Below the pieces are notes generated by a model that saw only the letters and a program-made list of their open reading frames with translations, did no database searches and was not told where the DNA came from. Shown piece by piece: positions 1,001 to 43,244 of a stretch of DNA of 64,000 bases (position 1 is the stretch's first letter; each line of letters opens with the position of its first letter). Location: positions 62,001 to 126,000 of IMG/VR virus record IMGVR_UViG_3300025536_000010; one strand, written 5' to 3'. Made by a program: the position numbers and the translations under genes.

Positions 1001-2221
1001 ATGCGCTGGGAAGAGATCCCGCTGGTCACGGATGACTGGGCCGTCAAAGTCGCTGCCCCGGCGTACGACATCCGTTGTGCCGTGGCCGGTGTCTACACGG
1101 CAGTTCCTATCGGTGTCTACTACCACCCGGGCCTGGAAAAAGCCGCGCTGTTCCCGCAAGGGACCGACGCTGCCGACCAGGCCCGGGTGCTCGCTGCGAC
1201 TGAGCGCGCGGTTGGACCCTCCGGGGTCCGACCGCTTTTTCTTACCTATCAGGAGGTGGGGGCTCCCGAAACCCAGTGGGTCAAGGTCGCCTACTCGCCC
1301 ACGCTGCGACGTCTCGGCGAGGCCACAAACTTCTTCCCCGGGCAGTACCCAGGCGGGCTGCCCAACCACCCGTCGCCGGTCGCGGCCATGCTGACGTCCG
1401 GCCTGGTCGGGGCGGGCCTCGGCTGGGGCGGCGGCAAGCTCCTCAACAAGTTGCTGCCCGAGCGCTTCGGGGACAACCTGGGGCGGACGGGCCTGATCCT
1501 CGGCGGCTTGCTGGGGGCTGCCCCCGGCGCCGCGTGGGGCGGTGTCAACACGCTGACCGGCAACCGCTTTAACGACTCCTCCCTCACGCAGGGCGACCCA
1601 CTCCAGGCAGACCTGCTGTTTCCGCGAGCGATGGACGGCTCCAACGCCGTACCGCCGGCGCAGGGGGCCGCGCCGCTTGAAGGGATCAAGGACTTCGTCA
1701 CCACGCAGCGCAGCGTGAACCCCAAGAAGCTGCTCAAATTCTCCGAGGATCTGGAGGCCGTACCGTTGGGCAAACGCTACCAGGCGGCCGTCGACCTGGT
1801 CAAAGAAGCCTTCGGGGACTCTTTCGGCGCGGAACCGGACGACCTGGGACCGACGCCGCTGGACGTCAACGTGAACAGCCTGGGGCAGACGCTTTGGCAG
1901 GCTGGAGCTACGCCGCGTCTGGCAGCCTCCACGATGGGCGCCATGTTCGCCGCTCAGCAGTTCCCCGACGCGCGGGCGCAGCCTGGTCTAGTGACGGCTC
2001 ACCAGATGGGGCAGCTGGCCCAGAGCATGGGGCAACCCTACCAGGAAGGCCCGAAGACAAACTACGGGCTCAACGCCGCCAAGGACTTCATCAAGGGCAC
2101 GGCGTTCGGGCTGGGCGCAAACGCCCTGGTCGGTACGCCGTACCGGGCCGGCACGTTTGGCCTGGCCAACGCTGGCCTTGGTGTCATAGGTGCTGTGGTG
2201 TCCAACTTCTTCGGAGGTTAG
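1001..2221 (+). CDS. Hypothetical virion/internal protein with glycine-zipper segments and K-x-A motifs
   Basis: 406-aa ORF; VKVA twice, VKEA; GLVGAGLGWGGG and GGLLGAAPG segments. Confidence 0.7.
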   Translation: MRWEEIPLVTDDWAVKVAAPAYDIRCAVAGVYTAVPIGVYYHPGLEKAALFPQGTDAADQARVLAATERAVGPSGVRPLFLTYQEVGAPETQWVKVAYSPTLRRLGEATNFFPGQYPGGLPNHPSPVAAMLTSGLVGAGLGWGGGKLLNKLLPERFGDNLGRTGLILGGLLGAAPGAAWGGVNTLTGNRFNDSSLTQGDPLQADLLFPRAMDGSNAVPPAQGAAPLEGIKDFVTTQRSVNPKKLLKFSEDLEAVPLGKRYQAAVDLVKEAFGDSFGAEPDDLGPTPLDVNVNSLGQTLWQAGATPRLAASTMGAMFAAQQFPDARAQPGLVTAHQMGQLAQSMGQPYQEGPKTNYGLNAAKDFIKGTAFGLGANALVGTPYRAGTFGLANAGLGVIGAVVSNFFGG

Positions 2222-2265
2222 AATACCGGAAGTTGAAGGGACTCTTTAACACGGAGGTTTTGCTC

Positions 2266-2709
2266 ATGGACGTAGCTACCGAGTTCAAGGCAGCCATCGA
2301 CGCCGTCATCGCCGACTACAAGGCGAAGGCCAAGGATGGGCTGACCATCCCCGAGATCTGGGAACTCTCCAGCAACGCACTCGCCACGTTCGTCAGCCTC
2401 GCCGGCAAGCTCAAGACCCTGAGCGGCGCCGACAAGAAGAAGCTGGTCATGGACGCGGCGGCCGACTTCTACGACAAGGTCATCGCGCCCATCGACATCC
2501 CCAGGGTGCCGAACTTCGTCGAGGTCACGGTGGTCGACCCCGCCGTGCGCCAGCTGTGGCTGATGCTCGCGGACGGGGCCGTCGAGGCCCTGGTCAACAT
2601 CTTCAACAAGTCCGATGGTTGGTTCAAGGAACCGGCCGACGACGGCACCTGGAAGCCGACCACGCCGACTGGCAATCCCGCGCTACCCCCAGGCTTCACA
2701 CCGTACTGA
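2266..2709 (+). CDS. Hypothetical protein
   Basis: ATG at 2266 preceded by CACGGAGG SD; typical codon usage. Confidence 0.75.
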   Translation: MDVATEFKAAIDAVIADYKAKAKDGLTIPEIWELSSNALATFVSLAGKLKTLSGADKKKLVMDAAADFYDKVIAPIDIPRVPNFVEVTVVDPAVRQLWLMLADGAVEALVNIFNKSDGWFKEPADDGTWKPTTPTGNPALPPGFTPY

Positions 2710-2810
2710 GAGGGACTCCGGGAGTCTGTGGCCTCCCGGGGAGCAACTGGCCCTGCCTGGATCGTTTCCGGGCAGGGCTTTCTCAAAACCGGCTTTTAGG
2801 AACGGACTCC

Positions 2811-4965: not shown

Positions 4966-4966
4966 G

Positions 4967-7900
4967 GTGGCTGGACTGCTGGCCGATTTCCCCAAGCCGA
5001 AAGCGCCAGCGCTGGACCTGCCCCAGACGAAGGCGCAGTCGATCTTGTCCAGCGGGCCGTTGACGGCCCCGCCTACCCCCGCGCCGCAAATGCGGGAGTT
5101 CGGCGATGCGCGCCTCACGCGCCAATACATCTACGAGGACGCCCTGAACGCCGCCCGCAACATCGAACCCATCGAAGACGAACGCTACCGCCTGCGGCTG
5201 GCCGACGTGGACTGGGCCGACCCGGAACGCTTCACGCGCAAGCAGCGCAAAGCGGCAATCCTGGCCGGCGACACGCTGGCTCGGCGCCTGCGCGGCAGCT
5301 GGGTATTGGAGGACGTTGCCACGGGTAAGGAGATCCAACGGCGCGCCCAGATCGTCGGCCGCATTCCTTACCTGTCCAGCATGGGCACGTTCGTCCACAA
5401 GGGGAACGAATACACCGTCAACCACCAGCAGCGATTGCGGCCCGGCGTCTTCGCCCGCGTCAAAGACAACGGCGAGATCGAGAGCCATGTCAACGTACTG
5501 CCGGGTAAGGGCGTCTCGCACCGCTACTTTCTGGACCCGGAGAAGGAACTGTTCAAGCTGCGGCTCGGACAGGCCGAGATGCCGCTGCTGCCGCTAGTCC
5601 AGGCCCTCGGCGCCACCGACAAGGAAGTCCGCGAGGCGTGGGGCGACCAGCTGTTCGCGGCCAACTACAAGCACCTGGACAGCGGCCAGACTATCAAGAA
5701 GCTGGCCGCGCGCCTGCTGCGCCGCGCCGACCAGGGTTTAGACGAAGGCACGACGCGGCAACGGCTGGCCGATACGATCAACCGTATGGAACTGGACCCG
5801 GAGGTCACCAAGCGCACGCTGGGCCAGCCGTACGCCAACCTAAACAAAGAAGTTATCCTCAACGCCACTAAAAAACTGATCCAGGTCAACCGCCGCGAAG
5901 TTGACCCCGACGACCGCGACAGCCTGGCCTACCAGCAATTCTTCGGCCCCGAAGACCTGTTCGCCGAGCGCCTGCGGCGGGACCACGGTAACCTGCGGAA
6001 ACAGCTGTTCAGGAAGATCGCCCTGGCCGGCAACCTGGACAAGATGCCCAGCGGCGCGCTGACGCCCCAGGTCGAGCAGGTGCTGCTCGGCAGCGGGCTC
6101 GCGCAGGCACTCGAAGAGATCAACCCGGCCGAAGTCTTCGATAAGCAGAGCCGTATCACGCGCATGGGCGAGGGCGGTATCCCAAGCCTAGACGCGATCC
6201 CCGACGAAGCCCGCGCCGTACAGCCGTCGCACATGGGTTTCATGGACCCGCTGCGGACACCGGAGAGCTTCCGCGTCGGCGTCGACCTGCACATGGCGCG
6301 CAGTTCGCGCAAAGGCCGCGACGGCCGCATCTACACGAGCCTCCGCGACCAGCAAGGGAACATGGTTTGGAAGTCCCCGCAGGACGTGGCTGAGGCAAGC
6401 ATCGCTACGCCGGACGTGCTCAAATGGGACACGAAGCGCGTGCCGGTGATGAAGGGAGGCAAGCTGGCCTATGTTCCGAAGAATGAAGTGGATTTTGTCC
6501 TACCTAACTTCGAGGACTCGTTTTCGCCGCTTGGTAACATGGTGCCGCTCAAGAGCATGGTCAAAGGCCAGCGCGTCGCAATGGCCAGTCGCATGCTCAC
6601 CCAGGCCCTCCCCCTCACCGCCGCCGAGGCTCCGCTTGTACAATCCGGCTTGCCTGGCAGTAAGGGCGCCCGGAGCTTCGAGGAAGAATACGGCAAGCAC
6701 ATGGGAGCAGTGGCGGCTGATTCGGACGGACGGGTCGTCGATGTCCGTGACGGAGTTATTAAGCTCAAGTACAACGACGGCCGCACCGACGAGGTCGAAC
6801 TCTACGAGAACCACCCGTTCAACCGGAAGACCTACATCAACCAGACCGCGGTAGTAAAACCAGGCGACGCGATTACGAAAGGACAGCTGCTGGCTCACAG
6901 CAACTACACCGACAAGACCGGGGCGACGGCGCTGGGCACAAACCTGAACGTCGCCTACTGGCCCTACCTGGGTTACAACTTCGAGGACGCGGTGGTGATC
7001 TCGGAGAGCGGGGCCAAGAAGATGTCCTCCGAGCACATGTACCAGCACGACTTGGAGGTCACGGACAAGCACAAGATCGGGAAGCGGCATTACGTCAACC
7101 TCTTCCCCGGTAAGTTCGACAAGAAGGCGTACGAGAACCTGGACGACGACGGCATTGTTCGGCCCGGCACCGTCGTCAACCACGGTGACCCGCTCATCCT
7201 GGCTGCGCGGCAGAAAGAGTTCGCGCAGAACAAGATCCACAAGAAAAAACAGGCAGGGTACGGCGATGAGTCTCTACTGTGGAAGCATCACGATCCTGGG
7301 GTTGTTACCGACGTCGTGTGGGGCAAAAACGGGCCTGTCGTCCTGGTTAAGTCCCAGTCTCAAATGCAAGTCGGCGACAAGCTCTCCGGCCGTTACGGCG
7401 ATAAAGGAGTGGTCGCGGCCATCGTCCCCGACAGCCAGATGCCGCACGGTCGGGACGGTAACCCCTTCGAGCTTCTCCTGAACCCGCTGGGCGTCATCAG
7501 CCGCACCAACCCGGCACAGAAAGTCGAGGCTCAGCTGGGCAAGATCGCGCGCTTGACCGGCAAGCCCGTCAAGGTGCCCGATTTCGAGGACGAGGAAGAC
7601 CTGACGGCCTGGGCACAAATGCAGCTGCGGATGCACGGCCTCAAGGACACCGAAGACATCGTCTGGCCCGAGAAAAACATGAAGGTGCCAGGCATCCACT
7701 CCGGTACGCGCTTCTTCATGAAGCTGCACCACACCGCCGAATCCAAAGGCCAGGGTCGCGGCGGTGGCTCCTATTCGATGGACGACACGCCGGCTAAAGG
7801 TGGCGCACAGGGTTGTTTCCTGGCCGGCACGCACCTGCATACGGCTGAGCACGGTTTTCAGGACATCGCCCGCATCGTCGGCCGGCGCATGCCTGTCAAA

Positions 7901-8113
7901 GTGCTGACTCGGCGGCCGGGCGGCGTACACCAGCAGTGGCTGCCGGTCACGGACTGGTTCCACTACCGGGTCGACGCAAACGCACTGGTGACGCTGCGGC
8001 TTGGTAACGGCCGGGAGATCCACGTCACCAGGAACCACGAGTTCGTCATGGCAGACGGCACGCGGAAACTGGCGGGCGACCTGGTCGCGGGCGACGACCT
8101 GATGGAGGTTTGA
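4967..8113 (+). CDS. rpoB: Phage RNA polymerase beta subunit (N-extein, 949 aa) fused to N-terminal split-intein half
   Basis: RpoB motifs GTFVHKGNEYTVNHQQRLRPGVF, HMGFMDPLRTPES, GYNFEDAVVIS, GDKLSGRYGDKGVV, LNPLGVISRTN, FMKLHH; ends in an intein-like CFLAGT...VTRNH. Confidence 0.93.
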   Translation: MAGLLADFPKPKAPALDLPQTKAQSILSSGPLTAPPTPAPQMREFGDARLTRQYIYEDALNAARNIEPIEDERYRLRLADVDWADPERFTRKQRKAAILAGDTLARRLRGSWVLEDVATGKEIQRRAQIVGRIPYLSSMGTFVHKGNEYTVNHQQRLRPGVFARVKDNGEIESHVNVLPGKGVSHRYFLDPEKELFKLRLGQAEMPLLPLVQALGATDKEVREAWGDQLFAANYKHLDSGQTIKKLAARLLRRADQGLDEGTTRQRLADTINRMELDPEVTKRTLGQPYANLNKEVILNATKKLIQVNRREVDPDDRDSLAYQQFFGPEDLFAERLRRDHGNLRKQLFRKIALAGNLDKMPSGALTPQVEQVLLGSGLAQALEEINPAEVFDKQSRITRMGEGGIPSLDAIPDEARAVQPSHMGFMDPLRTPESFRVGVDLHMARSSRKGRDGRIYTSLRDQQGNMVWKSPQDVAEASIATPDVLKWDTKRVPVMKGGKLAYVPKNEVDFVLPNFEDSFSPLGNMVPLKSMVKGQRVAMASRMLTQALPLTAAEAPLVQSGLPGSKGARSFEEEYGKHMGAVAADSDGRVVDVRDGVIKLKYNDGRTDEVELYENHPFNRKTYINQTAVVKPGDAITKGQLLAHSNYTDKTGATALGTNLNVAYWPYLGYNFEDAVVISESGAKKMSSEHMYQHDLEVTDKHKIGKRHYVNLFPGKFDKKAYENLDDDGIVRPGTVVNHGDPLILAARQKEFAQNKIHKKKQAGYGDESLLWKHHDPGVVTDVVWGKNGPVVLVKSQSQMQVGDKLSGRYGDKGVVAAIVPDSQMPHGRDGNPFELLLNPLGVISRTNPAQKVEAQLGKIARLTGKPVKVPDFEDEEDLTAWAQMQLRMHGLKDTEDIVWPEKNMKVPGIHSGTRFFMKLHHTAESKGQGRGGGSYSMDDTPAKGGAQGCFLAGTHLHTAEHGFQDIARIVGRRMPVKVLTRRPGGVHQQWLPVTDWFHYRVDANALVTLRLGNGREIHVTRNHEFVMADGTRKLAGDLVAGDDLMEV
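7814..8110 (+). other. Split intein N-half (IntN, 99 aa)
   Basis: Block A Cys1 (CFLAGT), block B TxxH (VTRNH), ends LAGDLVAGDDL then stop; no C-terminal Asn. Confidence 0.9.
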
Positions 8114-8116: not shown

Positions 8117-10030
8117 ATGGAAGACCTTGGAGTCTTGGCGGCGAAAGCCGCTACGCTGCGCGTGAAACTGGCAAACGTGGCGGCCTTGGCGGCTTCGCCG
8201 GCCGGCGAGAGCGCACTCGCGCGCCTGGGCGGTTGGCTGTCCGGCAAAGCATTCAAGCCGGTATCGCAGATGGCTCGTCCGCAGTTCGGCACGCTTAACG
8301 CGCTTGGTGAAGAAGCGCAGGCGCTGGCGCGCCAGCAGCGCATGAGCCGGCTGACTCTAGGCTTATCCGACAAGCCGTACTTCCATGTTCAAGATCGTGT
8401 TGGTGGCGGCTTAGCCGGTGCCTGGCTCGGTGCGTACGCAGACAGTAAAGTGAACGGCGAGGTCAACGACCTCTCCAGTGCCGGGCGCCGTGCGGCAGCG
8501 GTGCTCGGCGGCGGTTATCTGGGCGGTAAAGGCGCGAACTCGGCTTTGAACGTCGGCCGCAAGTTTACAGCGAACACGTCGCCGCTCATGGGTTACGACA
8601 CGGCTTTGATTCCGAAAGTGTCGCTCAAGTCTATCTGGAACCACGGCGTCATGGACCGCCCAATGGGCGGCATCGCGCGCGGCGGTAGCGGCAGTGAGGC
8701 TAACCCGCGCTACGAACTGCTGCGGCGCTATCTCGGCATTCACAAGAACGACGCGGCCAAAGACATGTTCATCTCGAACGCGGACAAGTCGCTGTCGTTC
8801 AACCCGGCAGTCGTAAAGCCTGGCTCGAAAACATGGCAGCAGTACATTGACCCAGGGCGGCAAGACAGCAGCCTGGGTGTCCGATTCAGCGAGGGCCTCA
8901 AGAACCCACCCAAGCTCGAAGTACCCAATAGCGCCCCGCCCAAGCTCGAAGTATCCGGCAACGCCCCGGCCAAGAGTCTCATTCTTCCGGGCGCTAACCC
9001 GGAACCGCCGCGCAGCGTTTTGCTGGGCGGTGGCCAGCCGACAGGGCCGGCTAAAAAGCTGATCCTGCCGGGACAGGAACCAAACGCACCTGCACCGGCG
9101 CTGGTCATGCCCGGTCAAGGTCAAGCGCCCAGACCTGCGCCGAAGCCAGCGGCCCCGGAGAAAACGTACAGCCTCAACGAGGGCGACCTGGCTAACCCAC
9201 CTGGGTACAGCGTCGACCAGAAGAACAACCCGTTCAACAATCTGTTCGGCTCGCACGACATGCGCCACGTCCAGGGCTCTGTTGAGCGCTTGCCGGGCGG
9301 CAAGTTCCGCACCTCGCACGAGCTAGGTGACACCTGGAACTTCCGTCTCGACCCGCACGAGACGCCAGAAGCCGCTGCTTACCTCAAAGGCATGGCTGGC
9401 ACGTCGCCTAACCGCTGGGGCGAGTTCCTCAAGCAGAAGGCGGACATCGGACACGCCAGTGCCTACGGCGGCCCGGATAAAACAGTGAGCGACCGGCTCA
9501 AGAACTACGGCATGCGCAGTGTCATCGAAGCGGCAGCACAGAAAGAAGCTCCGGTCATTCGGCAACGTATGCGCTTCACTTACGAGGCACCTACCGAAGC
9601 CAACGCGGCTTTCGCCAAGGCGACTGGCGGAGTAGCGCCGAGCGAGATCGAGTTGTTGTCGTCCAACGTCGCCGGGCCTGCCGTGCTTAGCCCCGAACGT
9701 CAGCAAATGCTGCGGCGGCTGCTTGGCGGCAGTGCAGTCGCGGGCACCGGCGGCCTTTACGCGAGCGGCCAGCTACCGAGCAAAGACACGCCCCAGGCTG
9801 CAACGCCACAGCCGCAGCCGCTAACGCCAAAACAAGAGGCACCTGCGTCGAAGACGTGGCGACCACGGGGACGAGAAGCACTATCGGCTTTCTTCCGCAA
9901 GCCGAAGTCTGAGCTATCTACTCGGCAGAAAATGATCCGCGGTGTCACCGACCGCGCGGCCGGCGGCATCCGCAGCTTCTGGGACCGTATGCAGCAGCGT
10001 TATGGCGGCAGTGGAGGGCTCGGAGCGTGA
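8117..10030 (+). CDS. Hypothetical 637-aa protein between the split-intein halves
   Basis: GGAGG SD; stop overlaps the next start (GTGA); N-terminal AKAA/VKLA, Gly zippers, Pro-rich repeats; no LAGLIDADG, HNH or GIY-YIG motif seen. Confidence 0.8.
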   Translation: MEDLGVLAAKAATLRVKLANVAALAASPAGESALARLGGWLSGKAFKPVSQMARPQFGTLNALGEEAQALARQQRMSRLTLGLSDKPYFHVQDRVGGGLAGAWLGAYADSKVNGEVNDLSSAGRRAAAVLGGGYLGGKGANSALNVGRKFTANTSPLMGYDTALIPKVSLKSIWNHGVMDRPMGGIARGGSGSEANPRYELLRRYLGIHKNDAAKDMFISNADKSLSFNPAVVKPGSKTWQQYIDPGRQDSSLGVRFSEGLKNPPKLEVPNSAPPKLEVSGNAPAKSLILPGANPEPPRSVLLGGGQPTGPAKKLILPGQEPNAPAPALVMPGQGQAPRPAPKPAAPEKTYSLNEGDLANPPGYSVDQKNNPFNNLFGSHDMRHVQGSVERLPGGKFRTSHELGDTWNFRLDPHETPEAAAYLKGMAGTSPNRWGEFLKQKADIGHASAYGGPDKTVSDRLKNYGMRSVIEAAAQKEAPVIRQRMRFTYEAPTEANAAFAKATGGVAPSEIELLSSNVAGPAVLSPERQQMLRRLLGGSAVAGTGGLYASGQLPSKDTPQAATPQPQPLTPKQEAPASKTWRPRGREALSAFFRKPKSELSTRQKMIRGVTDRAAGGIRSFWDRMQQRYGGSGGLGA

Positions 10031-10149
10031 AAATAACTTCGGTAGAACCGTTCGCCGGCACTGCGGATCTGGAGGGGAAGGTGGACGTCTACGACATTAC
10101 CGTCGCGGACCTCCACCTTTACGGCGTCTACGGAGTGCTGGTGTCCAAC
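10027..10149 (+). other. Split intein C-half (IntC, 41 aa)
   Basis: MKITS...VYDITV..LH.Y...GVLVSN followed by +1 Ser (10150); same architecture as cyanobacterial DnaE IntC (MIKI...VYDIGV..DHNF....ASN). Confidence 0.9.
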
Positions 10150-14132: not shown

Positions 14133-14216
14133 GAGTCCTCCTTTCGGCGGGCGTGGGTTACAAAGGATTGTGGCCCACGTCCGTTTTCTAAAAGCCAGTT
14201 TTGAGGGAGGGAGCCC

Positions 14217-31980: not shown

Positions 31981-32021
31981 AGGGGTGCCCGGGGGTTGGG
32001 AGAGGCTCTCGGGCACCTTTT
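31981..32021 (+). terminator. Intrinsic terminator after the MCP
   Basis: GGTGCCCG...CGGGCACC stem followed by TTTT. Confidence 0.65.
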
Positions 32022-32057
32022 CTAAAAGCCAGTTTTTGACGCGCAGGGAGGCGTATC

Positions 32058-33976: not shown

Positions 33977-36900
33977 ATGTCGGACTTGATTCCCGGCCCG
34001 CGCGGCGAACGCGGCCACCAAGGTTACCAAGGTCACCGTGGCCTGCGCGGACACCAGGGCAGTCTTGGCCTGACCGGCGACCAAGGCAACCAAGGCGTAC
34101 AAGGTAACCAAGGCTTCCAGGGACCGGCAGACGGTTTTCAGGGCAGCCAAGGCGACCAAGGGTTGCAAGGCTTCCAAGGACGGCAAGGCTTCCAGGGCCT
34201 AACCGGCAGCGGCTCCCAGGGGGCGGCAGGCGGCACCGGCCTGCAAGGCAACCAAGGTTTCCAGGGAGCAGCGGGCAGCACCGGCAGCCAAGGCGCGCAG
34301 GGAGCGGCCGGCGCTGGCAGCCAGGGCGCGCAGGGAGCGGCCGGCAGTGGCAGCCAGGGCCTGCAAGGTTTCCAAGGTGCTGTCGGCGTAACCGGCAATC
34401 AGGGTAACCAGGGCCAGGCTGGTGGCGCCGGAAACCAAGGGAATCAAGGAGCGCAAGGACGCCAAGGTATCACTGGCGCACAAGGTGACCAGGGTTTCGG
34501 CCTGCAAGGTTTCCAAGGCCGGCAAGGCTCGACCGGCGTGCAGGGTTTCCAGGGTCCGGCCGGCAGCGGCGCGCAGGGAGCCCAGGGTTCGACTGGCGTC
34601 CAGGGCGCGCAGGGAAATCTCGGCGAGCAGGGCGAGCAAGGTGAACAAGGCGACCAAGGTGACCAGGGGGACACTGGCGTACAGGGTTTGCAAGGTTTTC
34701 AAGGTGCCACGGGTGGCGTCGGTGCGCAGGGTATCCAGGGTGACCAAGGCGACACCGGCGAGCAAGGTGACCAGGGTGACCAAGGCGAACAAGGCGCCCA
34801 AGGCGCAACCGGCCCGCAGGGTTTCCAGGGAAGCATCGGCTTGCAGGGCCAGACGGGCGAGCAAGGCGAGCAAGGTTTCCAGGGCTCCGGCGCGCAGGGC
34901 GCCCAAGGTCTGCAAGGAGCGCAGGGTTTGCAGGGCCGCGAAGGCACCGGGCTCCACTACGTCTACGACGACCAGACAGCCGCCGCCGACCCCGGCACGG
35001 GCGAGTTCCGCCTCAACAACTCGGACGTGACCCAGGTTACCGAGATCTACTTGCACGAGACGGACCAGGACAACAACGACAACCAAAATCTTCTGGCCAT
35101 CTGGGACGACGCAACCAGTGTGAACAGGGGCTTGATTTTCCTGCGCAACCGTACGGCCGGCGGCTACATCGCCTACAAGCTGGTCAGCGACTGGACGGAC
35201 AACACGAACTGGCGGACGGCAACCGTCGAGTTCGTCAACTCGGACGGCACGCATTCCAACGGCGACAGTTTCGACATCACTTTTGCCAAGATTGGCGACC
35301 GCGGCGCCCAGGGTGACGCAGGCGGCAACGCTTTCCCCTACGTCTACTCGACCACTACGACCGACGCAGACCCCGGTTCTGGCTTCATCCGTTTCAACAG
35401 CGGCACGATGGCATCGGTGACCGAGGTCTACATCGACCTGGAGTCGTCGGCAGCGGCCGACCTCACGACCTGGATCGAAAGTTTTGACAACTACGCCACG
35501 TCCACACACCGCGGCGTACTGCAAGTTTTCAAAGCATCGGACCCAACCGTTTTCGTCAACCTGGCTGTCACCGGCTCGGTAACCACCGCCACCGGCTACC
35601 GCAAGCTGACGGTTACCTACATTGCCAGCGACGGCACTTTCACCAACCTCGACGAGGTGGTGGTCGGTTTCGCCTACACCGGGCAGCAAGGCTCCCAGGG
35701 CGCGCAAGGCAATCAAGGTAGCCAAGGTAATCAAGGCGACCCGGCCGGCAACGTGGTCCAGTACCAGTATTCGACCACCACGGCAGACGCCGATCCGGGT
35801 GCTGGTTTCTTCCGTCTCAACAACGCAGCGATGGCCTCCGTCACGGAGATGTACATCGACCTGGTCGACAGCCTGGCGGTCACGCAGACAGCATGGATCG
35901 AGTCGCTTGACGACGTCGGCAGCACGGCCGACCGCGGCGTGCTGCGCATCGCCAACGCCACAGACGGCACCGTGTTTGCCATCTACCGCGTAACAGGCTC
36001 GGTGACGTCCGCGAGTGGCTACCGCAAGCTGACGCTCAGTTACGTCACACACAACGGCACGCTGGCCAACAACGACGACACGATCATCAGTTTTGCCGAC
36101 GCAGGCCAGACAGGAGCCCAGGGCCTGCAAGGAGCCCAGGGCCTGCAAGGAGCCCAGGGCCTGCAAGGAGCCCAGGGCCTGCAAGGTTTGCAAGGTAGTC
36201 AAGGTAATCAAGGTGTACCCGGCTCTGGCGCTCAAGGCGACCAGGGCGACCAAGGCGACACGGGCGATCAGGGCGCACAAGGCGCACAGGGTCTGCAAGG
36301 CTTGCAAGGTTTACAGGGCCTGCAAGGCGCCCAGGGCCTGCAAGGCGCCCAGGGTAACCAGGGGAGCCAGGGTGAGGTCGGTGAACCTGGCGGCTATAGC
36401 GCCGAGTACCAGTGGTCGAACTCTACCACGGACGCCGATCCAGGCGGCGGCTTCCTGCGCTTCAACAACGGCACAGTGTCTTCGGTCACGCAGCTGTACA
36501 TCGACTTGGCCGACCGGCACACCAACGACCAGACACCGTGGATCGAGTCGTTTGACGATTTCGGCGCGACGGCTAACCGCGGGGCGCTCAAAATCTTCAA
36601 GCTGGGCGACCCGACCGTGTTCGCCATCTTCCGCGTCACGGACACGATTGATACGCCTGCGGGCTATCGCAAGATCACCGTGGTCTACGTTGACCACAAC
36701 GGCTCGTTGACCAACAACGACAACATCGTTGTGTCGTTTGCGCATGCCGGCCAGCAAGGCTCCCAGGGCTTGCAAGGCGCATCGGACGGGGATGCCGGAC
36801 ACGAAGGCGGCAGCGTCTACTACAACTGGAACACGGACACAGCCAGCAGCGACCCCGGCAACGGCTACGTTAAGGTCGACAACGCCACGATGTCCTCCGT

Positions 36901-37897
36901 GACAAAGCTGTACATCAGCGACCAGGACTTGAACGCGGTCAACATCGACACCTGGCTCGGCTCTTGGACGGGTTCATCGTCCGTGGTCAAGGGTGCGTTG
37001 AAACTTGCGCAGTACGTCCCGGGCGGCGGCGGGCCGCTCAACTGGGCGATCTTCCTCATTACGACGTACACCGATAACGGCAGCTGGTACGATTTCGATG
37101 TCACCTATCAGGCGCACTCGGGTAGCTTCTCTGCGGACGACGACATCGACATCGCTTTCGACCGCACTGGCGACAAGGGCAGCCAGGGCGACCAGGGCTT
37201 CCAGGGCATTCGTGGCAGCCAGTGGACGTCGAACGGCATGGACCCGAGCGGCGGCAGCCCGCAAACGAACGATCAGTGGTTGAACACCACCAGCGGCAAC
37301 GTCTTCTACTGGGACGGCGACAGCTGGGAACTGACAGGCAACATCAAGGGCGAGCAGGGCCTGCAAGGGTTCCAAGGTAATCAAGGAGAGCAAGGTTTCC
37401 AAGGAAATCAGGGTTTCCAAGGAAATCAAGGCGAGCAAGGTTTCCAAGGAAATCAAGGCGAGCAAGGCTTCCAAGGCTTCCAAGGTGACCAAGGCGCCCC
37501 AGGGGCCAAGGAAGCCATTATGCCGACCCGCGTCGAAGACGCGGAGGAGTATGTCGCGCTCGTCTGCACCGAGGCCCCGCAAGCCACTTTCCAGGACCAC
37601 ATGATTGTGGTCGTGCGACAGGCCCGGGAAGAGTTCGAGATCGACCCGTACTTCGTTCAGGTCTGCGAGCCGGGGTCGATCATGGTGACGGCAAGCCAGC
37701 CCAACCGAGCCGTGCCGGTGGGAGCCTACGTCACGAACGCCGGCAAAGTGGTCGTCGAGGCGGAACATCCCGAGCAGTTCCGCGTCATCCTGACACTGAC
37801 CGGCACGCGCCGCGGCGCCCCGGCGCGGTTCAGCCGCCGTAGCCGCGAAGACATGGAGAAGAACATCCGCTTCTGGGACAGCTGGAAGCAGCTGTAA
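33977..37897 (+). CDS. Collagen-like fibre protein with five repeated globular domains
   Basis: Extensive (G-x-Q)n triplets interleaved with five Y.[YW]...T...DPG.G..[RK]..N domains. Confidence 0.85.
36112..36183 (+). repeat. Perfect 18-bp tandem repeat x4 (GAQGLQ)
   Basis: aggagcccagggcctgca repeated four times. Confidence 0.9.
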
Positions 37898-38947: not shown

Positions 38948-39271
38948 ATGGCAGCGATTATCTTCACGCACGGGTTCGAGACAGACAAAAAGAAGTTGAA
39001 GAAGCGGTATCCTGCGGTAGACACCGGCGTCCAACAAATCGTTGGACAGTTCGTTCGGAACGAAAAGGTGGACGGTGTCCGCGTGCCCGACGCACCAGGC
39101 TGTTTGAAAGTGCGCGTAAAGAACGACGACAACTCGCGCGGTAAAAGCGCCGGCTACCGCGTGCTGTACAGCACGTTGTCCGGCGGTACAGTGTTGCTGT
39201 TCGCCATTTACGAGAAGACGAAAGAAGACAAGAAAGCGGCGGAAGTCCGGGCGTTGCGTAACCGTCCCTAA
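38948..39271 (+). CDS. RelE/HigB-like toxin-family protein
   Basis: F..DKKKLKKRYP...LKVRVKNDDNSRGKSAGYRVLY...LLFAIYEK, the RelE-family GKSGGYRVIY pattern; AAGGAG SD. Confidence 0.72.
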   Translation: MAAIIFTHGFETDKKKLKKRYPAVDTGVQQIVGQFVRNEKVDGVRVPDAPGCLKVRVKNDDNSRGKSAGYRVLYSTLSGGTVLLFAIYEKTKEDKKAAEVRALRNRP

Positions 39272-39285
39272 CCAGGAGAGACAAC

Positions 39286-39597
39286 ATGGGTTTGCCGAGC
39301 GAGTTAGAGAAGTTCTTGCAGGACAAGTTCCCCGGTTGCGTTGTCAAGCACATCAACAACGTGGAGCCGGGTGATCTCGATCCCGCCGCGCTGGCAGAGT
39401 TGGACCAGCGGCGTCAGGAGATACTGGATCGGGACCGGCAGTCCCTGCGCAATGGCGTGTGCGGGAACTGCGGCGCAAAGTACCCGGGAGAATGGCCGCC
39501 GCCGGACGAAGTCGGCCTAGCCGAGGGTTGGGGCCTCTACACGGACGAGGAGGACGAGCCGGTACTGCTCGTCTGCCCCTGCGACGACGCTGACTAA
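39286..39597 (+). CDS. Hypothetical acidic protein with CxxC / CxC
   Basis: AGGAG SD; CGNCG...CPC. Confidence 0.7.
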   Translation: MGLPSELEKFLQDKFPGCVVKHINNVEPGDLDPAALAELDQRRQEILDRDRQSLRNGVCGNCGAKYPGEWPPPDEVGLAEGWGLYTDEEDEPVLLVCPCDDAD

Positions 39598-39626
39598 ATA
39601 ATGCCCCCTTTTGCGTCAGGATAAGT
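39594..39626 (+). promoter_or_regulatory. Repeated bipartite motif copy 2
   Basis: CTAAATAA-N10-TGCGTCAGGATAAGT. Confidence 0.6.
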
Positions 39627-39667
39627 GAGAGGACTCTCACCTATCCATCTACCGAAAGGGTGCAATC

Positions 39668-39850
39668 ATGGCTCAGCAGACGCAGTTCGTGACGGTCAAG
39701 GAAGAAGTGGCGGCCTTTGAGGCTAACCTGTACGCTCCGGCGTATCAGAGGGGCGGGTTATGGGGTCGGTTGCCGGCCCAGACGTTCCGGCCGATTAACA
39801 GGACGGCGGCCAAGTCCCAGGGACAGGGCAAGTTGCGGAAGGCAAGCTAG
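39668..39850 (+). CDS. Small hypothetical protein
   Basis: ACCGAAAGGG upstream; followed by a terminator. Confidence 0.55.
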   Translation: MAQQTQFVTVKEEVAAFEANLYAPAYQRGGLWGRLPAQTFRPINRTAAKSQGQGKLRKAS

Positions 39851-39856
39851 GTCTAG

Positions 39857-39900
39857 GCAGAAGCGGCCCGGACGGCGGACGTCCGGGCCATTCTGTTTTT
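39857..39900 (+). terminator. Intrinsic terminator
   Basis: GGCCCGGACG-GCGGA-CGTCCGGGCC followed by TTCTGTTTTT. Confidence 0.7.
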
Positions 39901-39917
39901 ACCCGGGAGGGCCGAAC

Positions 39918-40085
39918 GTGGACGACTTGAAAATTGTCAAAGAAGAGGACAAACTCGTCGAGGAGGCGCTGGCGACAACCGACTTCGCGGCGGTGGTCCG
40001 CGAGAAAGACCAGGGCGAAGAGGATACGAAGGAGTACCACAAAGCCCGCGGTCGCAAACGGGACCGGCTCGTCCAGGCCGGCTAA
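39918..40085 (+). CDS. Small charged hypothetical protein
   Basis: GTG start after GGGAGG. Confidence 0.55.
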   Translation: MDDLKIVKEEDKLVEEALATTDFAAVVREKDQGEEDTKEYHKARGRKRDRLVQAG

Positions 40086-40143
40086 TCTAAAAAATGGTTT
40101 TGAACGGAGGCTAGCCTCGCACATGCGAAAGGAGAACGAAGGA

Positions 40144-40296
40144 ATGTCGAAGGATACCGTGCAGGACATCCTGATCGTCACACGAGGCGACAACATCGCC
40201 GTCGACGTCGACCACGGGCCGGGGGTCAACACAGGCACCAGGAGGGTGACCGACCCCTACGCCCACATGTGGATCGACGAAGGGGGTGAGGGGTAG
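40144..40296 (+). CDS. Small hypothetical protein
   Basis: ATG after GAAAGGAG...GAAGG; ends WIDEGGEG. Confidence 0.5.
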   Translation: MSKDTVQDILIVTRGDNIAVDVDHGPGVNTGTRRVTDPYAHMWIDEGGEG

Positions 40297-40315
40297 CGAA
40301 CCGAGGCAACACAAC

Positions 40316-40344
40316 AGGGGCACGCCGCATGGCGTGCCCTTTTT
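40316..40344 (+). terminator. Intrinsic terminator
   Basis: GGGCACGCC-GCAT-GGCGTGCCC followed by TTTTT. Confidence 0.75.
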
Positions 40345-40371
40345 CGTTTACCACACCGAAAGGAATGCACC

Positions 40372-40755
40372 ATGTTCAATTTCTACTGCACGCCGCGTGC
40401 GTTCGACAACGGCACGCTCTACATCACCACCGACTTCCGGCCGCACCGTGTCTACGCCGTGTGGCTCAAAATGGGCCATGTCGAAGACCGCGTCGGCACC
40501 CACGGGTCCATGTGGGGCCGGTTGGAAGACGGCAGCCAGGCTACCCTGATCTTCCGGGCCGTCGAGTGCTGCACGGACGCCGAGTTGGCCGTCAGTGAAT
40601 GCGTCGTCACTGGTAGGAGTGTTTGCCAGCTGGTGCGCCGGTTCGAGCGCTACGCCCAGAAGCACAAGGGCATTCGCGTGCGTCTCTACGCGGAGGGCAA
40701 CAACCTGGCGATCAAGAGCGGCCGGTACAACCTGCCCAAGCGCGCCGCCGTCTAG
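40372..40755 (+). CDS. Hypothetical protein
   Basis: ACCGAAAGGA SD; 127 aa. Confidence 0.7.
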   Translation: MFNFYCTPRAFDNGTLYITTDFRPHRVYAVWLKMGHVEDRVGTHGSMWGRLEDGSQATLIFRAVECCTDAELAVSECVVTGRSVCQLVRRFERYAQKHKGIRVRLYAEGNNLAIKSGRYNLPKRAAV

Positions 40756-40771
40756 TAACAAAGTGTGTTCC

Positions 40772-40798
40772 GAGCGGGCTTTGCCAGCCCGCTCTTTT
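40772..40798 (+). terminator. Intrinsic terminator
   Basis: GAGCGGGCT-TTGCC-AGCCCGCTC followed by TTTT. Confidence 0.75.
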
Positions 40799-40825
40799 CG
40801 TTTTAACCGTGAAAGGAGTTTTATC

Positions 40826-41959
40826 ATGGTGACGGCTCAGACCACTGGGAACGGTATCATCGACGGCAACAACCTGCAACAGGCTCTCACGACTGCCGGG
40901 TTGCGCGCAATCATCGGATTCACGGCGGCGCTGACAGCGCTGCTGCCAAAGATGCGGGCGAACCACTACTGGGTCGCGGACGTGTTCGCGGAGAGCATTC
41001 TCCAGTTCAAGTACGGCGTGGCCTTCACGCTGCAAAAGGCGATCAAGCTGAGCCAGATCGACCTGGCGGCGAGTATGTTCAACGGCGCGCGTCTGGACAT
41101 GCGCCTGGACGGGCTCAGGTCGCTGCGCATTGCAGAGTCGTTCGCGGCGTACAAGCACGGCATGAAGCCGATCATCCTGTGGAAGCGTCCCGACGGTCGC
41201 TACATTGTTCTGGAAGGCAATCACATTCTGTGCGCTTGCCGGGCGATGGGGATCGAGACACTGTGGGCCTACGTCATCGAGTGCGACGAAGCGACCGCAG
41301 GGCTTATCACGCGCAGCTGGAACACCGTGCAAGGGTTCGGCCAAAAAGAAGAGGACAGCTACACCCTGGCGGTGGATGAACTGACCTCGCGCGGCGAAGC
41401 CGCCGTCGTGCTCCAGACGATCAAGGACGTCGCTAAGATTTGGGGCCTGCGGTGGAAGCGGCTCCAGGAGCGCTACCGTCAGCGCCTGTTCCTCAATCAC
41501 ATGTTCAAGGCCAAAATCGACGGGGGGTTGGGCTTGAAGCCGCACGGGCACACGGACTGTTTCAGCGAGCGGACGATTGAGGCCATCATGGGCCTCAACG
41601 ACGCCGAGAAACAGCGTGAACTGTCCGAAGCTATCATGAACCACGGATTCTCGTGGGGTGTGGTCAGCAACATCGTCGCTACCAGCACGGAAGGCATGGC
41701 AGCGTTTAAGGCAGCCATCGTCACATGGACAAACGCGACGTCGGGTACGTCGCTTGATGGTACGGTGGTGCGTGTTCGGCTCACCGAACAACAGCGGATC
41801 AAGAAAGCGATTGATTCGTTTGCAAAGAGCCTCGACAGCATGCCCGACGATCTGGCCAAGGCATGCACCGCCAGCGTTGTCATGTCTCTGCGCCCGAAAC
41901 TCGACAAAATCTTGCAGCGCTGCCCGGTCATTCGGGAGGCTACCTATGGCAAGTATTGA
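40826..41959 (+). CDS. ParB/Sulfiredoxin-like N-terminal domain protein
   Basis: PIILWKRPDGRYIVLEGNHILCACRAMGIETLWAYVI resembles ParB box II; ATG 40826 after GAAAGGAG. Confidence 0.62.
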   Translation: MVTAQTTGNGIIDGNNLQQALTTAGLRAIIGFTAALTALLPKMRANHYWVADVFAESILQFKYGVAFTLQKAIKLSQIDLAASMFNGARLDMRLDGLRSLRIAESFAAYKHGMKPIILWKRPDGRYIVLEGNHILCACRAMGIETLWAYVIECDEATAGLITRSWNTVQGFGQKEEDSYTLAVDELTSRGEAAVVLQTIKDVAKIWGLRWKRLQERYRQRLFLNHMFKAKIDGGLGLKPHGHTDCFSERTIEAIMGLNDAEKQRELSEAIMNHGFSWGVVSNIVATSTEGMAAFKAAIVTWTNATSGTSLDGTVVRVRLTEQQRIKKAIDSFAKSLDSMPDDLAKACTASVVMSLRPKLDKILQRCPVIREATYGKY

Positions 41960-42284
41960 CACCGACTACGTCCGCCGGAAATTCGGCGACGGGCACTGGC
42001 GAACGTTCGACGAGATGGCAGCGGCGGCGGCAACGGACGTGCCCGCTGCCGAGGCCATTCGCGTCTGCCTATCGAAGGGGCGGGGGTACGCAAAGAAGAC
42101 GCGCGAAGATCAGTACCGCCTCGGCGTCCGTGCAATGGTCTGCCGCGTTTTCGGACAACTCCAGCGAGACGGCTGGACCGACAGCCGAGCGCGCGACGCG
42201 ACAGACGAACAAGAGTACCGCATCCTGACTGAAACTGAACGGAAACCGACGACGCGCGATCGTTGGACAAAGGCCGGCGACTGA
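41946..42284 (+). CDS. Hypothetical protein
   Basis: ATG 41946 after GGGAGG, overlapping the ParB-like stop. Confidence 0.6.
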   Translation: MASIDTDYVRRKFGDGHWRTFDEMAAAAATDVPAAEAIRVCLSKGRGYAKKTREDQYRLGVRAMVCRVFGQLQRDGWTDSRARDATDEQEYRILTETERKPTTRDRWTKAGD

Positions 42285-42335
42285 GCCAGCCTTGACGTCG
42301 AGAACCGAAAGACCCATGCTACCCTTATAGGGAGT

Positions 42336-43244
42336 ATGGGCCTTTTTCTTACCTATCAGCCAGGGACGGCGATGGAAACCAACTGCCAGGTCTGCCCTCC
42401 CCAATGCGCGTCGGTCTTCGACCGCGTTGTGGTTAGCCACCTGATCCGCGGCCAGACCCGCGTCATGTGGGAACTGCTCGACACTTTCACAGACCCAGGC
42501 CCGCTCACCTTCCAGCTGCAAGTTGGCACCACGAACAACTCGGACGCAGACGACTGGGAAGACGTCGGCCTGCCTGTGGTCGATCAGTATTTCGCGTTCG
42601 ACCCGGACCAGCGCGTTTGGGGCAAAACGAACTGGACGCACTACCGCGTCGCGCTGACGACGAGTCTGGGCACCTACACCAGCGCACCAACTGGCGGCAT
42701 GGGCATCTTGCCGCGCCGCTGGTGGCGGCTAGCCCGCAACGTCGTCCGACAGCGACTGGTGGAGTTCAACAAAGGCCCTGGCGGCCAGGAAGGCTACCTG
42801 CTCAAACGGCGCTGGACCGGCGAGAACTGCCCCACTTGCCTCGACTACCAGACCAGAGAAAGTCGCAACCCGGACTGCCCCGACTGCTACGGCACCGGCA
42901 AGAAGTGCGGCTACTTCTACCCGATGGCCTGCGTCTGGGCTGAGTTGTCTCCCAAGGCCCACCACACCGACCTGGACGCCGGCCAGGGCCGCGCCACGGT
43001 CAACGACATCATCGTCAGCGCCAAAATGGCGGCTACCTACCTGATGTCCGAAGGAGACGTTTGGGTCGCCAAGGAATCGGACGACCGTTACTACGTTCAC
43101 GAGGTCCAGCACACCAGCGAGATGAAAGGCGTGCCGTTGGTGGCCGAGGTGAAAATGCGGCCGGTGCCGTTCACGTCAGCTGTCTACAGCATTGCGATCC
43201 CTCAGCAAGACGAGGCCAAAGACACGCCCGAGGAGGACGACTGA
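42336..43244 (+). CDS. Putative neck / head-closure protein with Cys cluster
   Basis: LLKRRWTGENCPTC...DCPDCYGTG; first gene of the tail module; start may instead be 42372. Confidence 0.55.
   Translation: MGLFLTYQPGTAMETNCQVCPPQCASVFDRVVVSHLIRGQTRVMWELLDTFTDPGPLTFQLQVGTTNNSDADDWEDVGLPVVDQYFAFDPDQRVWGKTNWTHYRVALTTSLGTYTSAPTGGMGILPRRWWRLARNVVRQRLVEFNKGPGGQEGYLLKRRWTGENCPTCLDYQTRESRNPDCPDCYGTGKKCGYFYPMACVWAELSPKAHHTDLDAGQGRATVNDIIVSAKMAATYLMSEGDVWVAKESDDRYYVHEVQHTSEMKGVPLVAEVKMRPVPFTSAVYSIAIPQQDEAKDTPEEDD

What the first reader, a model, noticed from the sequence alone, without database searches (positions are those of the whole stretch)
1235..42380. Exact 18-bp AT-rich repeat plus a spaced hexamer, 41 kb apart at the starts of the head and tail modules
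Seen: CTTTTTCTTACCTATCAG occurs at 1235-1252 and 42342-42359, and each copy is followed exactly 15 nt later by GAAACC (1268-1273; 42375-42380). Both read LFLTYQ with identical codons that are rare here (CTT TTT CTT), pointing to DNA-level constraint. Both lie near the start of a structural block that follows accessory genes. The reverse strand (GGTTTC-N15-CTGATAGGTAAG) shares GATAGGT with the island motif. Inference: an antisense promoter facing the upstream accessory genes, a late-gene operator, or a recombination site.
Basis: partly seen in the sequence, partly recalled or inferred. Interest (0 to 1): 0.62.

Follow-up and report, generated by a model that had tools for sequence, protein, structure and literature searches.

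The report
Conserved phage terminator-plus-box transcription signal
The repeated 18 bases are two copies of a conserved transcription signal (a T-run plus an 11-base box, usually just after an RNA hairpin) that a group of uncultivated giant phages places at the entrance of their large conserved gene blocks, in one case written into a protein-coding gene.

Summary
CTTTTTCTTACCTATCAG is exact at 1235-1252 and 42342-42359.

It is not a shared peptide, an antisense promoter or a recombination site. Each copy directly follows a different GC-rich sense-strand RNA hairpin, so each looks like an intrinsic terminator whose U-tract runs into an invariant box, TTA(C/G)CTATCAG.

- **Family.** The window belongs to a 234.9-kb, 62% GC virus record that encodes its own RNA polymerase beta and beta' homologues and a sigma-like protein. 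Its genome has about 6 such elements. Six relatives each carry several clear copies or a few.
- **Copy 2.** It is non-coding and lies 12 nt before the true start (42372) of a conserved neck-like gene. Ten further relatives keep hairpin + T-run + box 6-12 nt before that gene's orthologue, although their upstream neighbours are unrelated.
- **Copy 1.** It lies inside a real gene (1001-2221). All seven lineages with the peptide LFL encode it with the same rare codons, CTT TTT CTT, so the constraint is on the nucleotides.
- **GAAACC.** The hexamer is chance.

The likely function is a transcription-unit boundary signal that stops incoming transcripts and probably restarts or modifies transcription into the long downstream blocks. 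No RNA data exist, so the mechanism is inferred.

The parts
1208..1235 (+). GC-rich hairpin (12-bp stem, 4-nt loop) inside the P0001 coding sequence, directly 5' of copy 1
   Evidence: Top terminator-like hit of the first 20 kb. RNA fold dG -30.6 kcal/mol, z -5.1, against -22.6 for the antisense strand.
1235..1252 (+). Copy 1 of the 18-mer: T-run (1236-1243) plus box TTACCTATCAG (1242-1252). It is in frame in P0001 as L-F-L-T-Y-Q.
   Evidence: The peptide LFL(S/T)YQ is conserved in the family. Codons CTT TTT CTT are identical in 7 of 7 lineages, while invariant residues nearby show only 0.53 pairwise codon identity.
1001..2221 (+). P0001, a single 406-aa gene of unknown function with a Gly/Ala-rich hydrophobic C-terminal part; it hosts copy 1
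   Evidence: More than 140 homologues were found; most of the 120 listed cover 100% of the query. Alignment A1. BLASTP against the relative L007 covers residues 3-372.
42313..42340 (+). Hairpin directly 5' of copy 2, in the intergenic space after the accessory genes
   Evidence: dG -23.6, z -4.2. Orthologous hairpins with different stem sequences occur in the 10 relatives whose copy lies close before the P0002 start.
42342..42359 (+). Copy 2 of the 18-mer, non-coding, 12 nt before the P0002 start codon
   Evidence: The same element lies 6-12 nt before the orthologous start in L008, L009, L013, L016 and L123-L127.
42372..43244 (+). P0002 (290 aa), a conserved gene; true start at ATG 42372, not 42336
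   Evidence: 296 homologues of about 285-297 aa begin at this point. The model (pLDDT 78) has an Ig-like domain plus a domain weakly like phage neck, stopper or connector proteins.
1268..1273 (+). GAAACC hexamer after copy 1 (the partner is at 42375-42380): a chance match
   Evidence: Present, but not conserved at that offset in any paralogous or orthologous copy.
384..983 (+). HNH/endonuclease VII-like gene, an insertion between the conserved upstream gene and P0001
   Evidence: PHROG hits at 1e-23. Relatives have the conserved gene F4 directly before P0001.
38948..42284 (+). Accessory island of small ORFs, each closed by its own hairpin plus T-run (39865-39889, 40316-40341, 40772-40794); it ends at copy 2
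   Evidence: The genes upstream of P0002 share no homology among 11 genomes, except one pair.
4967..8113 (+). RNA polymerase beta-like gene. With the beta'-like genes 10027-11787 and 14627-18658 and the sigma-like gene 61377-62105, it is the candidate reader of the signal.
   Evidence: PHROG and Pfam hits. Only one beta-like gene in the genome.

Best explanation
The 18-mer is a cis-acting transcription signal that punctuates transcription units in a clade of uncultivated giant phages. Its constrained core is sharply bounded: C, a run of T (one often C), then the box TTA(C/G)CTATCAG, 18-19 nt in all. In about three quarters of copies this core directly follows a GC-rich hairpin that is more stable as sense RNA, so hairpin plus U-tract form an intrinsic terminator.

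Proposed working:
1. Transcripts coming from the variable accessory genes upstream are stopped at the hairpin and U-tract (inferred from anatomy).
2. The T-run plus box is read sequence-specifically by the phage's own transcription machinery (beta, beta' and sigma-like proteins) to start or re-license transcription into the long conserved block downstream (inferred).

The element therefore insulates and opens the RNA-polymerase/head block at copy 1 and the neck/tail block at copy 2. Copy 1 is overprinted on the linker of a protein-coding gene, which fixes the peptide LFL(S/T)YQ and its rare codons.

Shown: recurrence, sharp bounds, orthologous conservation, synonymous-site constraint, hairpin association, anchoring to the downstream gene.
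Not shown: any RNA 5' or 3' end, or which protein reads the box.
For: Recurrence: 5 forward and 1 reverse matches in the 234.9-kb genome against 0 for the reversed pattern, and several clear hairpin-backed copies or a few in each of six relatives, almost all co-oriented with the genes.

Bounds: over 27 non-redundant copies, information content is high only from -7 to +11.

Hairpins: 24 of 32 copies have a strong hairpin abutting the T-run, median dG -20 against -11 for shuffles. GNRA and UUCG tetraloops occur among the loops. Sense RNA is more stable than antisense in 17 of 22 (p = 0.002).

Orthology: the element lies 6-12 nt before the P0002 start in 11 genomes, although their upstream neighbours share no homology.

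Synonymous constraint inside P0001: 7 of 7 lineages use CTT TTT CTT, and three of these copies lack a hairpin, so T-run plus box is constrained on its own.

Genome layout: no strong plus-strand terminator for 38.6 kb after copy 1 or for 27 kb after copy 2.

Machinery: the phage has its own beta, beta' and sigma-like genes. Jumbo phages with their own RNA polymerases are known to use short, AT-rich, highly conserved single-block promoters (PMC7598289).
Against: No RNA data exist: only one DNA run holds the sequence, so neither termination nor initiation is demonstrated.

In relative G003 the element lies about 80 nt after a stop codon and about 260 nt before the next gene. In G004 (locus L040) a different conserved motif lies between the box and the next gene. 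Both fit a pure terminator better than a promoter.

The spacers between the box and the start codons often hold Shine-Dalgarno-like runs. A start site about 10 nt after the centre of the box would cut these off, so a promoter would need its start at the 3' edge of the box.

A terminator or promoter 235 nt inside an essential-looking gene is awkward under either reading, because full-length P0001 needs read-through.

A second, more abundant motif (CTAAAAGCCAGTTTTGAG type) could be the general promoter.
Confidence: 0.5

Rival explanations
1. Terminator only. The box is a terminator-distal element that strengthens pausing or termination, for the phage or the host polymerase, and has no initiation role. 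The T-run plus box may even act as a hairpin-independent stop or pause for the phage enzyme.
For: The hairpin abuts the T-run in about 75% of copies. The position is 10-80 nt after upstream stop codons. The G003 cassettes place the element close to the upstream gene and about 260 nt from the next one. About half of the genome's intergenic plus-strand terminators carry the box or a TTTACC remnant. From my own knowledge, sequences downstream of the U-tract affect the efficiency of the T3/T7 early terminators.
Against: The 18-mer is perfectly kept inside P0001 in lineages that have no hairpin (L028, L063, L101). It stays 6-12 nt from the P0002 start while upstream genes are swapped, so it is anchored to the downstream gene. 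An efficient terminator inside a conserved gene would block that gene.
Confidence: 0.28
2. Pass-through loading or leader element. RNA polymerase pauses at the hairpin and U-tract, and a factor recognises the box, in the non-template DNA or in the RNA, and makes the polymerase terminator-resistant. Alternatively the U-rich box acts in the mRNA leader for stability or ribosome loading of the first gene.
For: One sense-strand, sharply bounded copy stands at the entrance of each long block, and it may lie in an untranslated leader or in a coding sequence, as ops and nut sites do. In G000 (39968), G001, G003 and G004 a promoter-like palindromic motif lies 30-50 nt upstream of a hairpin and box, the layout of lambda pR'-tR'. 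The box ends where Shine-Dalgarno-like runs begin.
Against: No NusG/RfaH-like gene was found in the phage. There are no strong terminators inside the long blocks that would need overriding. Intragenic copies have no start codon nearby, so a translation role cannot be general. The resemblance to boxA is loose and comes from memory only.
Confidence: 0.12
3. DNA-level site unrelated to transcription: a strand-specific nick site of the T5 or phiKMV type, or a recombination or insertion hotspot core at module boundaries.
For: It is strand-specific, has few copies per genome and has a conserved core of about 18 nt. Accessory genes, and an HNH endonuclease at 384-983, are inserted just upstream of both copies.
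Against: The association with sense-RNA-biased hairpins and U-tracts is unexplained by this reading. There are no joints or variants in the source contigs. The flanks of the two copies are unrelated, so there is no sign of exchange.
Confidence: 0.06
4. Chance repeat, or a shared functional peptide LFLTYQ (protein-level constraint).
For: My rough estimate of about 0.1 exact 18-mer repeats expected in 64 kb is not negligible. The peptide is conserved in the P0001 family.
Against: Copy 2 and most other copies are non-coding. Codons are fixed at synonymous sites. The element recurs at orthologous sites in many genomes.
Confidence: 0.02

Closest known systems
Intrinsic (Rho-independent) terminators, including the sequence-conserved terminator motifs reported for phiKZ and 201phi2-1 (PMC11512511)
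   Same: A GC-rich RNA hairpin, sometimes with a stable tetraloop, is followed at once by a U-tract. It lies after stop codons and is co-oriented with the genes. Giant phages are known to have recurrent terminator motifs.
   Different: Here the hairpin sequences vary freely, while an 11-nt box beyond the U-tract is nearly invariant across genomes of 47-70% GC. The T-run plus box persists without a hairpin and inside a coding sequence.
Early promoters of jumbo phages that encode multisubunit RNA polymerases (phiKZ, AR9, 201phi2-1; review PMC7598289)
   Same: A short, AT-rich, highly conserved single-block motif, found bioinformatically in several copies before operons in a phage that carries its own beta and beta' homologues.
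   Different: This phage has one polymerase set plus a sigma-like protein, not the two split sets of phiKZ. The motif is fused to a terminator hairpin. The downstream genes look structural, hence late rather than early. No start sites are known.
Lambda-type late-operon control (pR'-tR' with Q) and the ops and nut loading sites
   Same: A conserved sense-strand element at the entrance of very long operons. In some copies a promoter-like motif, a short leader and a terminator precede the genes.
   Different: No Q-, N- or RfaH-like protein was identified (for NusG). There is no sequence match to boxA or ops. No internal terminators need to be overridden.
Regulatory signals overprinted on coding sequence (for example the T7 class II promoters and T4 late promoters that lie inside genes)
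   Same: A nucleic-acid signal embedded in frame in a gene fixes otherwise rare codons.
   Different: The signal sits about 1 kb before the next gene start and is preceded, within the coding sequence, by a terminator-like hairpin in the GC-rich lineages.

Membership tests
Intrinsic terminator | Stable GC-rich RNA hairpin on the transcribed sense strand | tested here: met
   dG -30.6 (z -5.1) and -23.6 (z -4.2) at the two copies. 24 of 32 family copies have a hairpin. Sense is more stable than antisense in 17 of 22, p = 0.002.
Intrinsic terminator | U-tract immediately 3' of the stem | tested here: met
   The T-run starts 0-2 nt after the stem. Positions -6 to -1 are T or C in all 27 copies.
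Intrinsic terminator | Located downstream of a stop codon at the end of a transcription unit | tested here: inconclusive
   Met at copy 2 and at most copies. Not met at copy 1 and its six orthologues, which lie inside the P0001 coding sequence.
Intrinsic terminator | RNA 3' ends map to the U-tract | not testable with these tools
   No RNA run holds this sequence.
Phage-RNA-polymerase single-block promoter (jumbo-phage type) | Short, AT-rich, highly conserved block recurring before operons | tested here: met
   An 18-19-nt block, about 6 copies in this genome and from a few to several in six relatives. It lies 6-12 nt before the P0002 orthologue in 11 genomes.
Phage-RNA-polymerase single-block promoter (jumbo-phage type) | Phage encodes its own multisubunit RNA polymerase | tested here: met
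   Beta-like gene 4967-8113, beta'-like genes 10027-11787 and 14627-18658, sigma-like gene 61377-62105. There is a single set, unlike phiKZ.
Phage-RNA-polymerase single-block promoter (jumbo-phage type) | Transcription start at a fixed distance from the motif | not testable with these tools
   No RNA data. The Shine-Dalgarno-like spacers argue that any start must lie at the 3' edge of the box.
   No promoter-like site on the minus strand near 1235 or 42342. The element is co-oriented with the genes in all genomes.
Site-specific recombination core (att-like) | Exchange products or a recombinase linked to the repeats | tested here: not met
   The source contigs run through the site without joints. 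The flanks of the two copies are unrelated. More than two copies exist per genome. The contigs cannot show rare variants.
nut or ops-type antitermination site | Cognate NusG/RfaH-like or N/Q-like factor and a boxA or ops consensus | tested here: inconclusive
   No NusG domain in the phage genome, while the control genomes were positive. N- and Q-like factors were not searched for. The boxA resemblance is only recalled and is weak.
Shared coding peptide repeat | Both copies translated | tested here: not met
   P0002 homologues start after the 18-mer. Most copies are intergenic.

The most novel reading that the evidence does not exclude
The T-run plus box is not a classical promoter or terminator. 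It would be a pass-through licensing site specific to a phage-encoded bacterial-type RNA polymerase. Polymerase pauses at the hairpin and U-tract, and the box decides whether it terminates or continues in a terminator-resistant form into the 27-39-kb late blocks. The decision could depend on which enzyme or sigma-like factor is engaged. That would be a new type of temporal switch, and it would explain why the site can sit inside a translated gene.
Probability: 0.12. Interest if true: 0.8.

Novelty: new variant of a known kind. Interest (0 to 1): 0.55.

Why it matters
Giant phages that carry their own bacterial-type RNA polymerase are known almost only from metagenomes, and nothing is known about their transcription signals.

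A sharply defined 18-19-nt signal that is conserved across genomes from 47 to 70% GC offers three things:
- a handle to map their transcription units;
- a ready template for testing the reconstituted phage polymerase and its sigma-like protein;
- a marker for the module boundaries where accessory genes are inserted.

The intragenic copy is a clean natural case of a regulatory signal overprinted on a coding sequence, with measurable synonymous-site constraint.

For annotation it also corrects a start codon (P0002 starts at 42372, not 42336).

Tried and rejected
- **Cultured relatives.** Megablast of both regions, and tblastn of P0002, against 50,697 phage records gave no match. Only the beta-like protein finds distant cultured phages, at about 30% identity.
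- **Protein families.** Pfam gave nothing for P0001 or P0002. PHROGs gave nothing for P0001 and one weak hit of unknown function for P0002.
- **Known RNAs.** Rfam at gathering threshold found nothing on 10 loci that hold the element. tRNA scans found only one unrelated tRNA near a copy in L019.
- **RNA evidence.** One DNA run, the probable source, holds the sequence and no RNA run does. Laying its contigs showed a continuous contig with no joints or variants.
- **Phage-encoded factors.** Searches of the phage genome for a T7-like RNA polymerase (PF00940; uninformative, because the controls were also silent), sigma-70 region 2 and NusG gave no hits.
- **Literature.** A search for the box sequence found only unrelated primers.
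- **Internal translation start after copy 1.** Only this genome has an in-frame GTG (1256); the orthologues have none. Rejected.
- **GAAACC at +15.** Not conserved anywhere else. Rejected as chance.
- **Mobile element.** The hairpins differ between copies and the orthologues have no insertion at the site. Rejected.
- **Frameshift or slippage signal.** Considered from the sequence alone. There is no slippery heptamer, and non-coding copies dominate. Rejected.
- **Box-bearing terminators open longer terminator-free stretches than other terminators.** No clear difference.
- **Minus-strand variant between convergent genes** (genome 169806-169823). It lacks the T-run and the CAG, so it was left out as uncertain.
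- **Protein atlas look-ups.** These gave only weak leads, such as a tape-measure-like hit for the 2024-aa protein.

Full report
**Check of the observation.** The 18-mer CTTTTTCTTACCTATCAG is exact at 1235-1252 and 42342-42359. The window holds no other match with up to three mismatches, and no shuffle gave two matches. GAAACC follows 15 nt later in both copies. Outside a collagen-like repeat gene, the window has only three or four exact repeats of 17-19 nt. The pair alone is therefore only suggestive, and the case rests on what follows.

**Genome context.** The window is bases 62001-126000 of a 234,886-bp virus record with 62% GC. Almost all genes are on the plus strand. The only sequencing run that holds the sequence is from a subsurface metagenome.

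Each copy starts at the last base of a strong hairpin.
- At copy 1 the stem is 12 bp (1208-1235), dG -30.6 kcal/mol, z -5.1.
- At copy 2 the hairpin is at about 42313-42340, dG -23.6, z -4.2.
- The two hairpins have unrelated sequences, so similarity begins exactly where the stem ends.
- Hairpin plus TTTTTCTT is the anatomy of an intrinsic terminator. The remaining ACCTATCAG is extra.

**Coding or not.** Copy 1 is inside a real gene. ORF 1001-2221 (P0001, 406 aa) has more than 140 metagenomic homologues, and most of the 120 listed cover the whole query. The stretch LFL(S/T)YQEL is conserved in their alignment.

Copy 2 is not coding. The 296 homologues of P0002 are about 285-297 aa long and begin at the equivalent of ATG 42372. 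Two homologues whose starts were called too far upstream translate their upstream DNA as GLFLTYQ and GLFFSYQ. Their DNA carries the same element 12 and 6 nt before the real start. That was the first sign of non-coding conservation.

**A family of elements.** The whole genome has five forward matches and one reverse match with up to 3 mismatches, against none for the reversed control pattern. With looser matching, copies lie at genome positions 40030, 42426, 63235, 104342, 151557 and 232027. Nearly all follow a hairpin and are intergenic.

The pattern TTTYTTASCTATCAG, with up to 2 mismatches, gave these counts in relatives, some of which are probably chance:

| Relative | Matches |
|---|---|
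| G001 | 6 |
| G002 | 4 |
| G003 | 8 |
| G004 | 2 |
| G005 | 2 |
| G006 | 7 |

The reversed-pattern controls gave 0-2, and the hairpin-backed copies are co-oriented with the genes. Four more distant, lower-GC relatives gave nothing clear.

Over 27 non-redundant copies, information content is high only from -7 to +11: C, TTTTT, Y, TTA, S, CTATCAG, S. Nothing is conserved on either side except the G-rich 3' arm of the hairpin. Copies were selected by the 11-mer, so only the T-run part of that profile is unbiased.

Twenty-four of 32 copies have a strong hairpin abutting the T-run, with median dG -20 against -11 for shuffles. GNRA and UUCG tetraloops occur among the loops. Sense RNA folds better than antisense in 17 of 22 (Wilcoxon p = 0.002). 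The hairpins therefore act in the sense transcript.

**Orthologous conservation at copy 2.** Hairpin, T-run, box, 6-12 nt and then the ATG of the P0002 orthologue are found in this genome and in L008, L009, L013, L016 and L123-L127. L010 has the box 85 nt upstream. Within 1.3 kb upstream, ORFs share no detectable homology across these genomes, except for one pair.

In more distant relatives without the box, a conserved gene lies directly before P0002. The element thus belongs to the 5' edge of the conserved block, and the space just upstream of it is an insertion hotspot for accessory genes.

P0002 folds (pLDDT 78) into an Ig-like domain plus a domain weakly similar to phage neck, stopper and connector proteins. 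A 2024-aa protein downstream is weakly tape-measure-like. 'Start of the neck/tail block' is therefore plausible.

**Nucleotide-level constraint at copy 1.** I collected P0001 orthologues from virus and metagenome contigs.
- Every lineage with LFL at this point uses CTT TTT CTT. These are this genome and L061, L062, L063, L064, L101 and L028, which range from 50 to 70% GC.
- In five of the seven the whole six-codon stretch is the element with box TTA(C/G)CTATCAG. L061 has CGT in place of TAT, and L062 ends in CAC rather than CAG.
- Pairwise codon identity is 1.0 at these three residues, against 0.53 at 21 invariant residues nearby.
- In this genome CTT is 5.1% of Leu codons, TTT 16% of Phe and TAT 14.5% of Tyr.
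- Orthologues without the peptide lack the DNA motif.
- The GC-rich lineages (this genome, L062, L064) also build a hairpin from the preceding codons, each from different codons. Three other lineages (L028, L063, L101) have no convincing hairpin yet keep the 18-mer perfectly. T-run plus box is therefore constrained on its own.
- In more distant relatives the element lies upstream of the P0001 gene instead: 11 nt before the start in L076 and about 100 nt before it in L090 and L092.
- In this genome an HNH endonuclease gene (384-983) has been inserted between the conserved upstream gene and P0001.

**Surroundings.** Downstream of copy 1 lie:
- an RNA polymerase beta-like gene (4967-8113);
- two beta'-like genes (10027-11787 and 14627-18658);
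- a weak major-head hit (30989-31930);
- a collagen-like tail fibre gene (33977-37897);
- an island of small ORFs, each with its own terminator (38.9-42.3 kb).

Copy 2 follows the island. A sigma-70-like protein is at 61377-62105. Only one beta-like gene exists in the genome, so this is not the two-polymerase phiKZ arrangement. No strong plus-strand terminator lies between copy 1 and the island (38.6 kb) or for 27 kb after copy 2.

**Mechanism.** The facts require a sense-strand, sequence-specific signal tied to transcription-unit boundaries.

The hairpin and U-tract most simply stop transcripts that arrive from the variable upstream genes. The box must be read by something sequence-specific. 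The conserved candidates are the phage's own polymerase and its sigma-like protein.

I favour a combined stop-and-restart (or re-license) signal, for three reasons:
1. T-run plus box survives without the hairpin.
2. The element is anchored to the downstream gene.
3. Jumbo phages with their own polymerases are known to use short, conserved, AT-rich single-block promoters (PMC7598289).

Several things count against a simple promoter. In G003 the element lies about 80 nt after each gene and about 260 nt before the next. The Shine-Dalgarno-like spacers mean that any start site must sit at the 3' edge of the box. The position inside P0001 is awkward.

A terminator-only reading, a pass-through loading-site reading and a DNA nick or recombination reading remain as rivals. 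No RNA data exist to decide. This step is inference.

**Comparison with known systems.** The element works like an intrinsic terminator and meets that family's structural criteria, but it adds an invariant distal box that such terminators do not need. It resembles jumbo-phage early promoters in form, but it sits before probable structural genes and has no mapped start. Conserved terminator motifs are reported for phiKZ and 201phi2-1 (PMC11512511), but there the conservation described is linked to the stem-loop. A literature search for the box sequence found nothing relevant. I rate it a new variant of a known kind.

**Verdict.** The proposed antisense promoter and recombination site are not supported, and the GAAACC hexamer is chance.

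Noticed in passing
window 14184-14202, 32018-32036 (exact 19-mers), 47666-47684; inverted at 2778-2796: A second conserved motif, the quasi-palindrome CTAAAAGCCAGTTTTGAG, has 12 copies in the genome, 20-36 nt before start codons. It is conserved in relatives, for example about 25 copies of CCAAAAACCGGTTTTGAG in G004. It is probably the main promoter or operator class. In four cases it lies 30-50 nt upstream of a hairpin and box.
   Followed up: partly
window 39865-39889, 40316-40341, 40772-40794: The small accessory ORFs of the island are each closed by a hairpin plus T-run that runs into TTTACC or TTTTAACC and then an ACCGAAAGGAG-type ribosome-binding site. A similar hairpin followed by TTTTATTACCACAC precedes genes in relative G003. 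This may be a degenerate or second class of the same signal.
   Followed up: partly
window 384-983: An HNH/endonuclease VII-like homing endonuclease gene is inserted between a conserved gene and P0001. Relatives lack it at this place.
   Followed up: partly
genome G000:C1:14433-14450, minus strand (outside the window; locus L003): A 17-of-18 copy of the 18-mer lies in antisense orientation inside a plus-strand gene, which reads GKLMGKKKEE there. It has no hairpin. It is either chance or an antisense signal.
   Followed up: no
genome G000:C1:169806-169823, minus strand (outside the window): A tandem TTACCTATC TTACCTATC lies between convergent genes, downstream of one of the few minus-strand genes. 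It lacks the T-run and the CAG.
   Followed up: partly
relative G003:C1:100183-106151 (loci L042, L047, L055): Four tandem cassettes each comprise a gene, then a near-identical hairpin with box, then about 260 nt of conserved non-coding sequence that ends in a second hairpin. The non-coding part may be a small RNA. The cassettes lie next to a metacaspase-like gene, whose homologue in this genome (G000 40098-40895) also directly follows a box.
   Followed up: partly
window 33977-37897: A 1306-aa collagen-like (Gly-X-Y, 9-nt period) tail-fibre gene accounts for nearly all direct repeats in the window.
   Followed up: no
window 4967-8113, 10027-11787, 14627-18658, 61377-62105: The window holds a single set of RNA polymerase beta and split beta' homologues plus a sigma-70-like protein (regions 3 and 4). 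The nearest cultured relatives of the beta-like protein are about 30% identical (Salmonella phage Arash, Vibrio phages).
   Followed up: partly
window 12011-12109 and 29230-29397: Gly/Pro-rich repeats of the GGGAPPGGDPMGGG type are shared by two genes 17 kb apart.
   Followed up: no
window 2285-2301 and 30033-30049: Another exact 17-mer repeat (TCAAGGCAGCCATCGAC), with both copies inside coding regions. Not examined.
   Followed up: no
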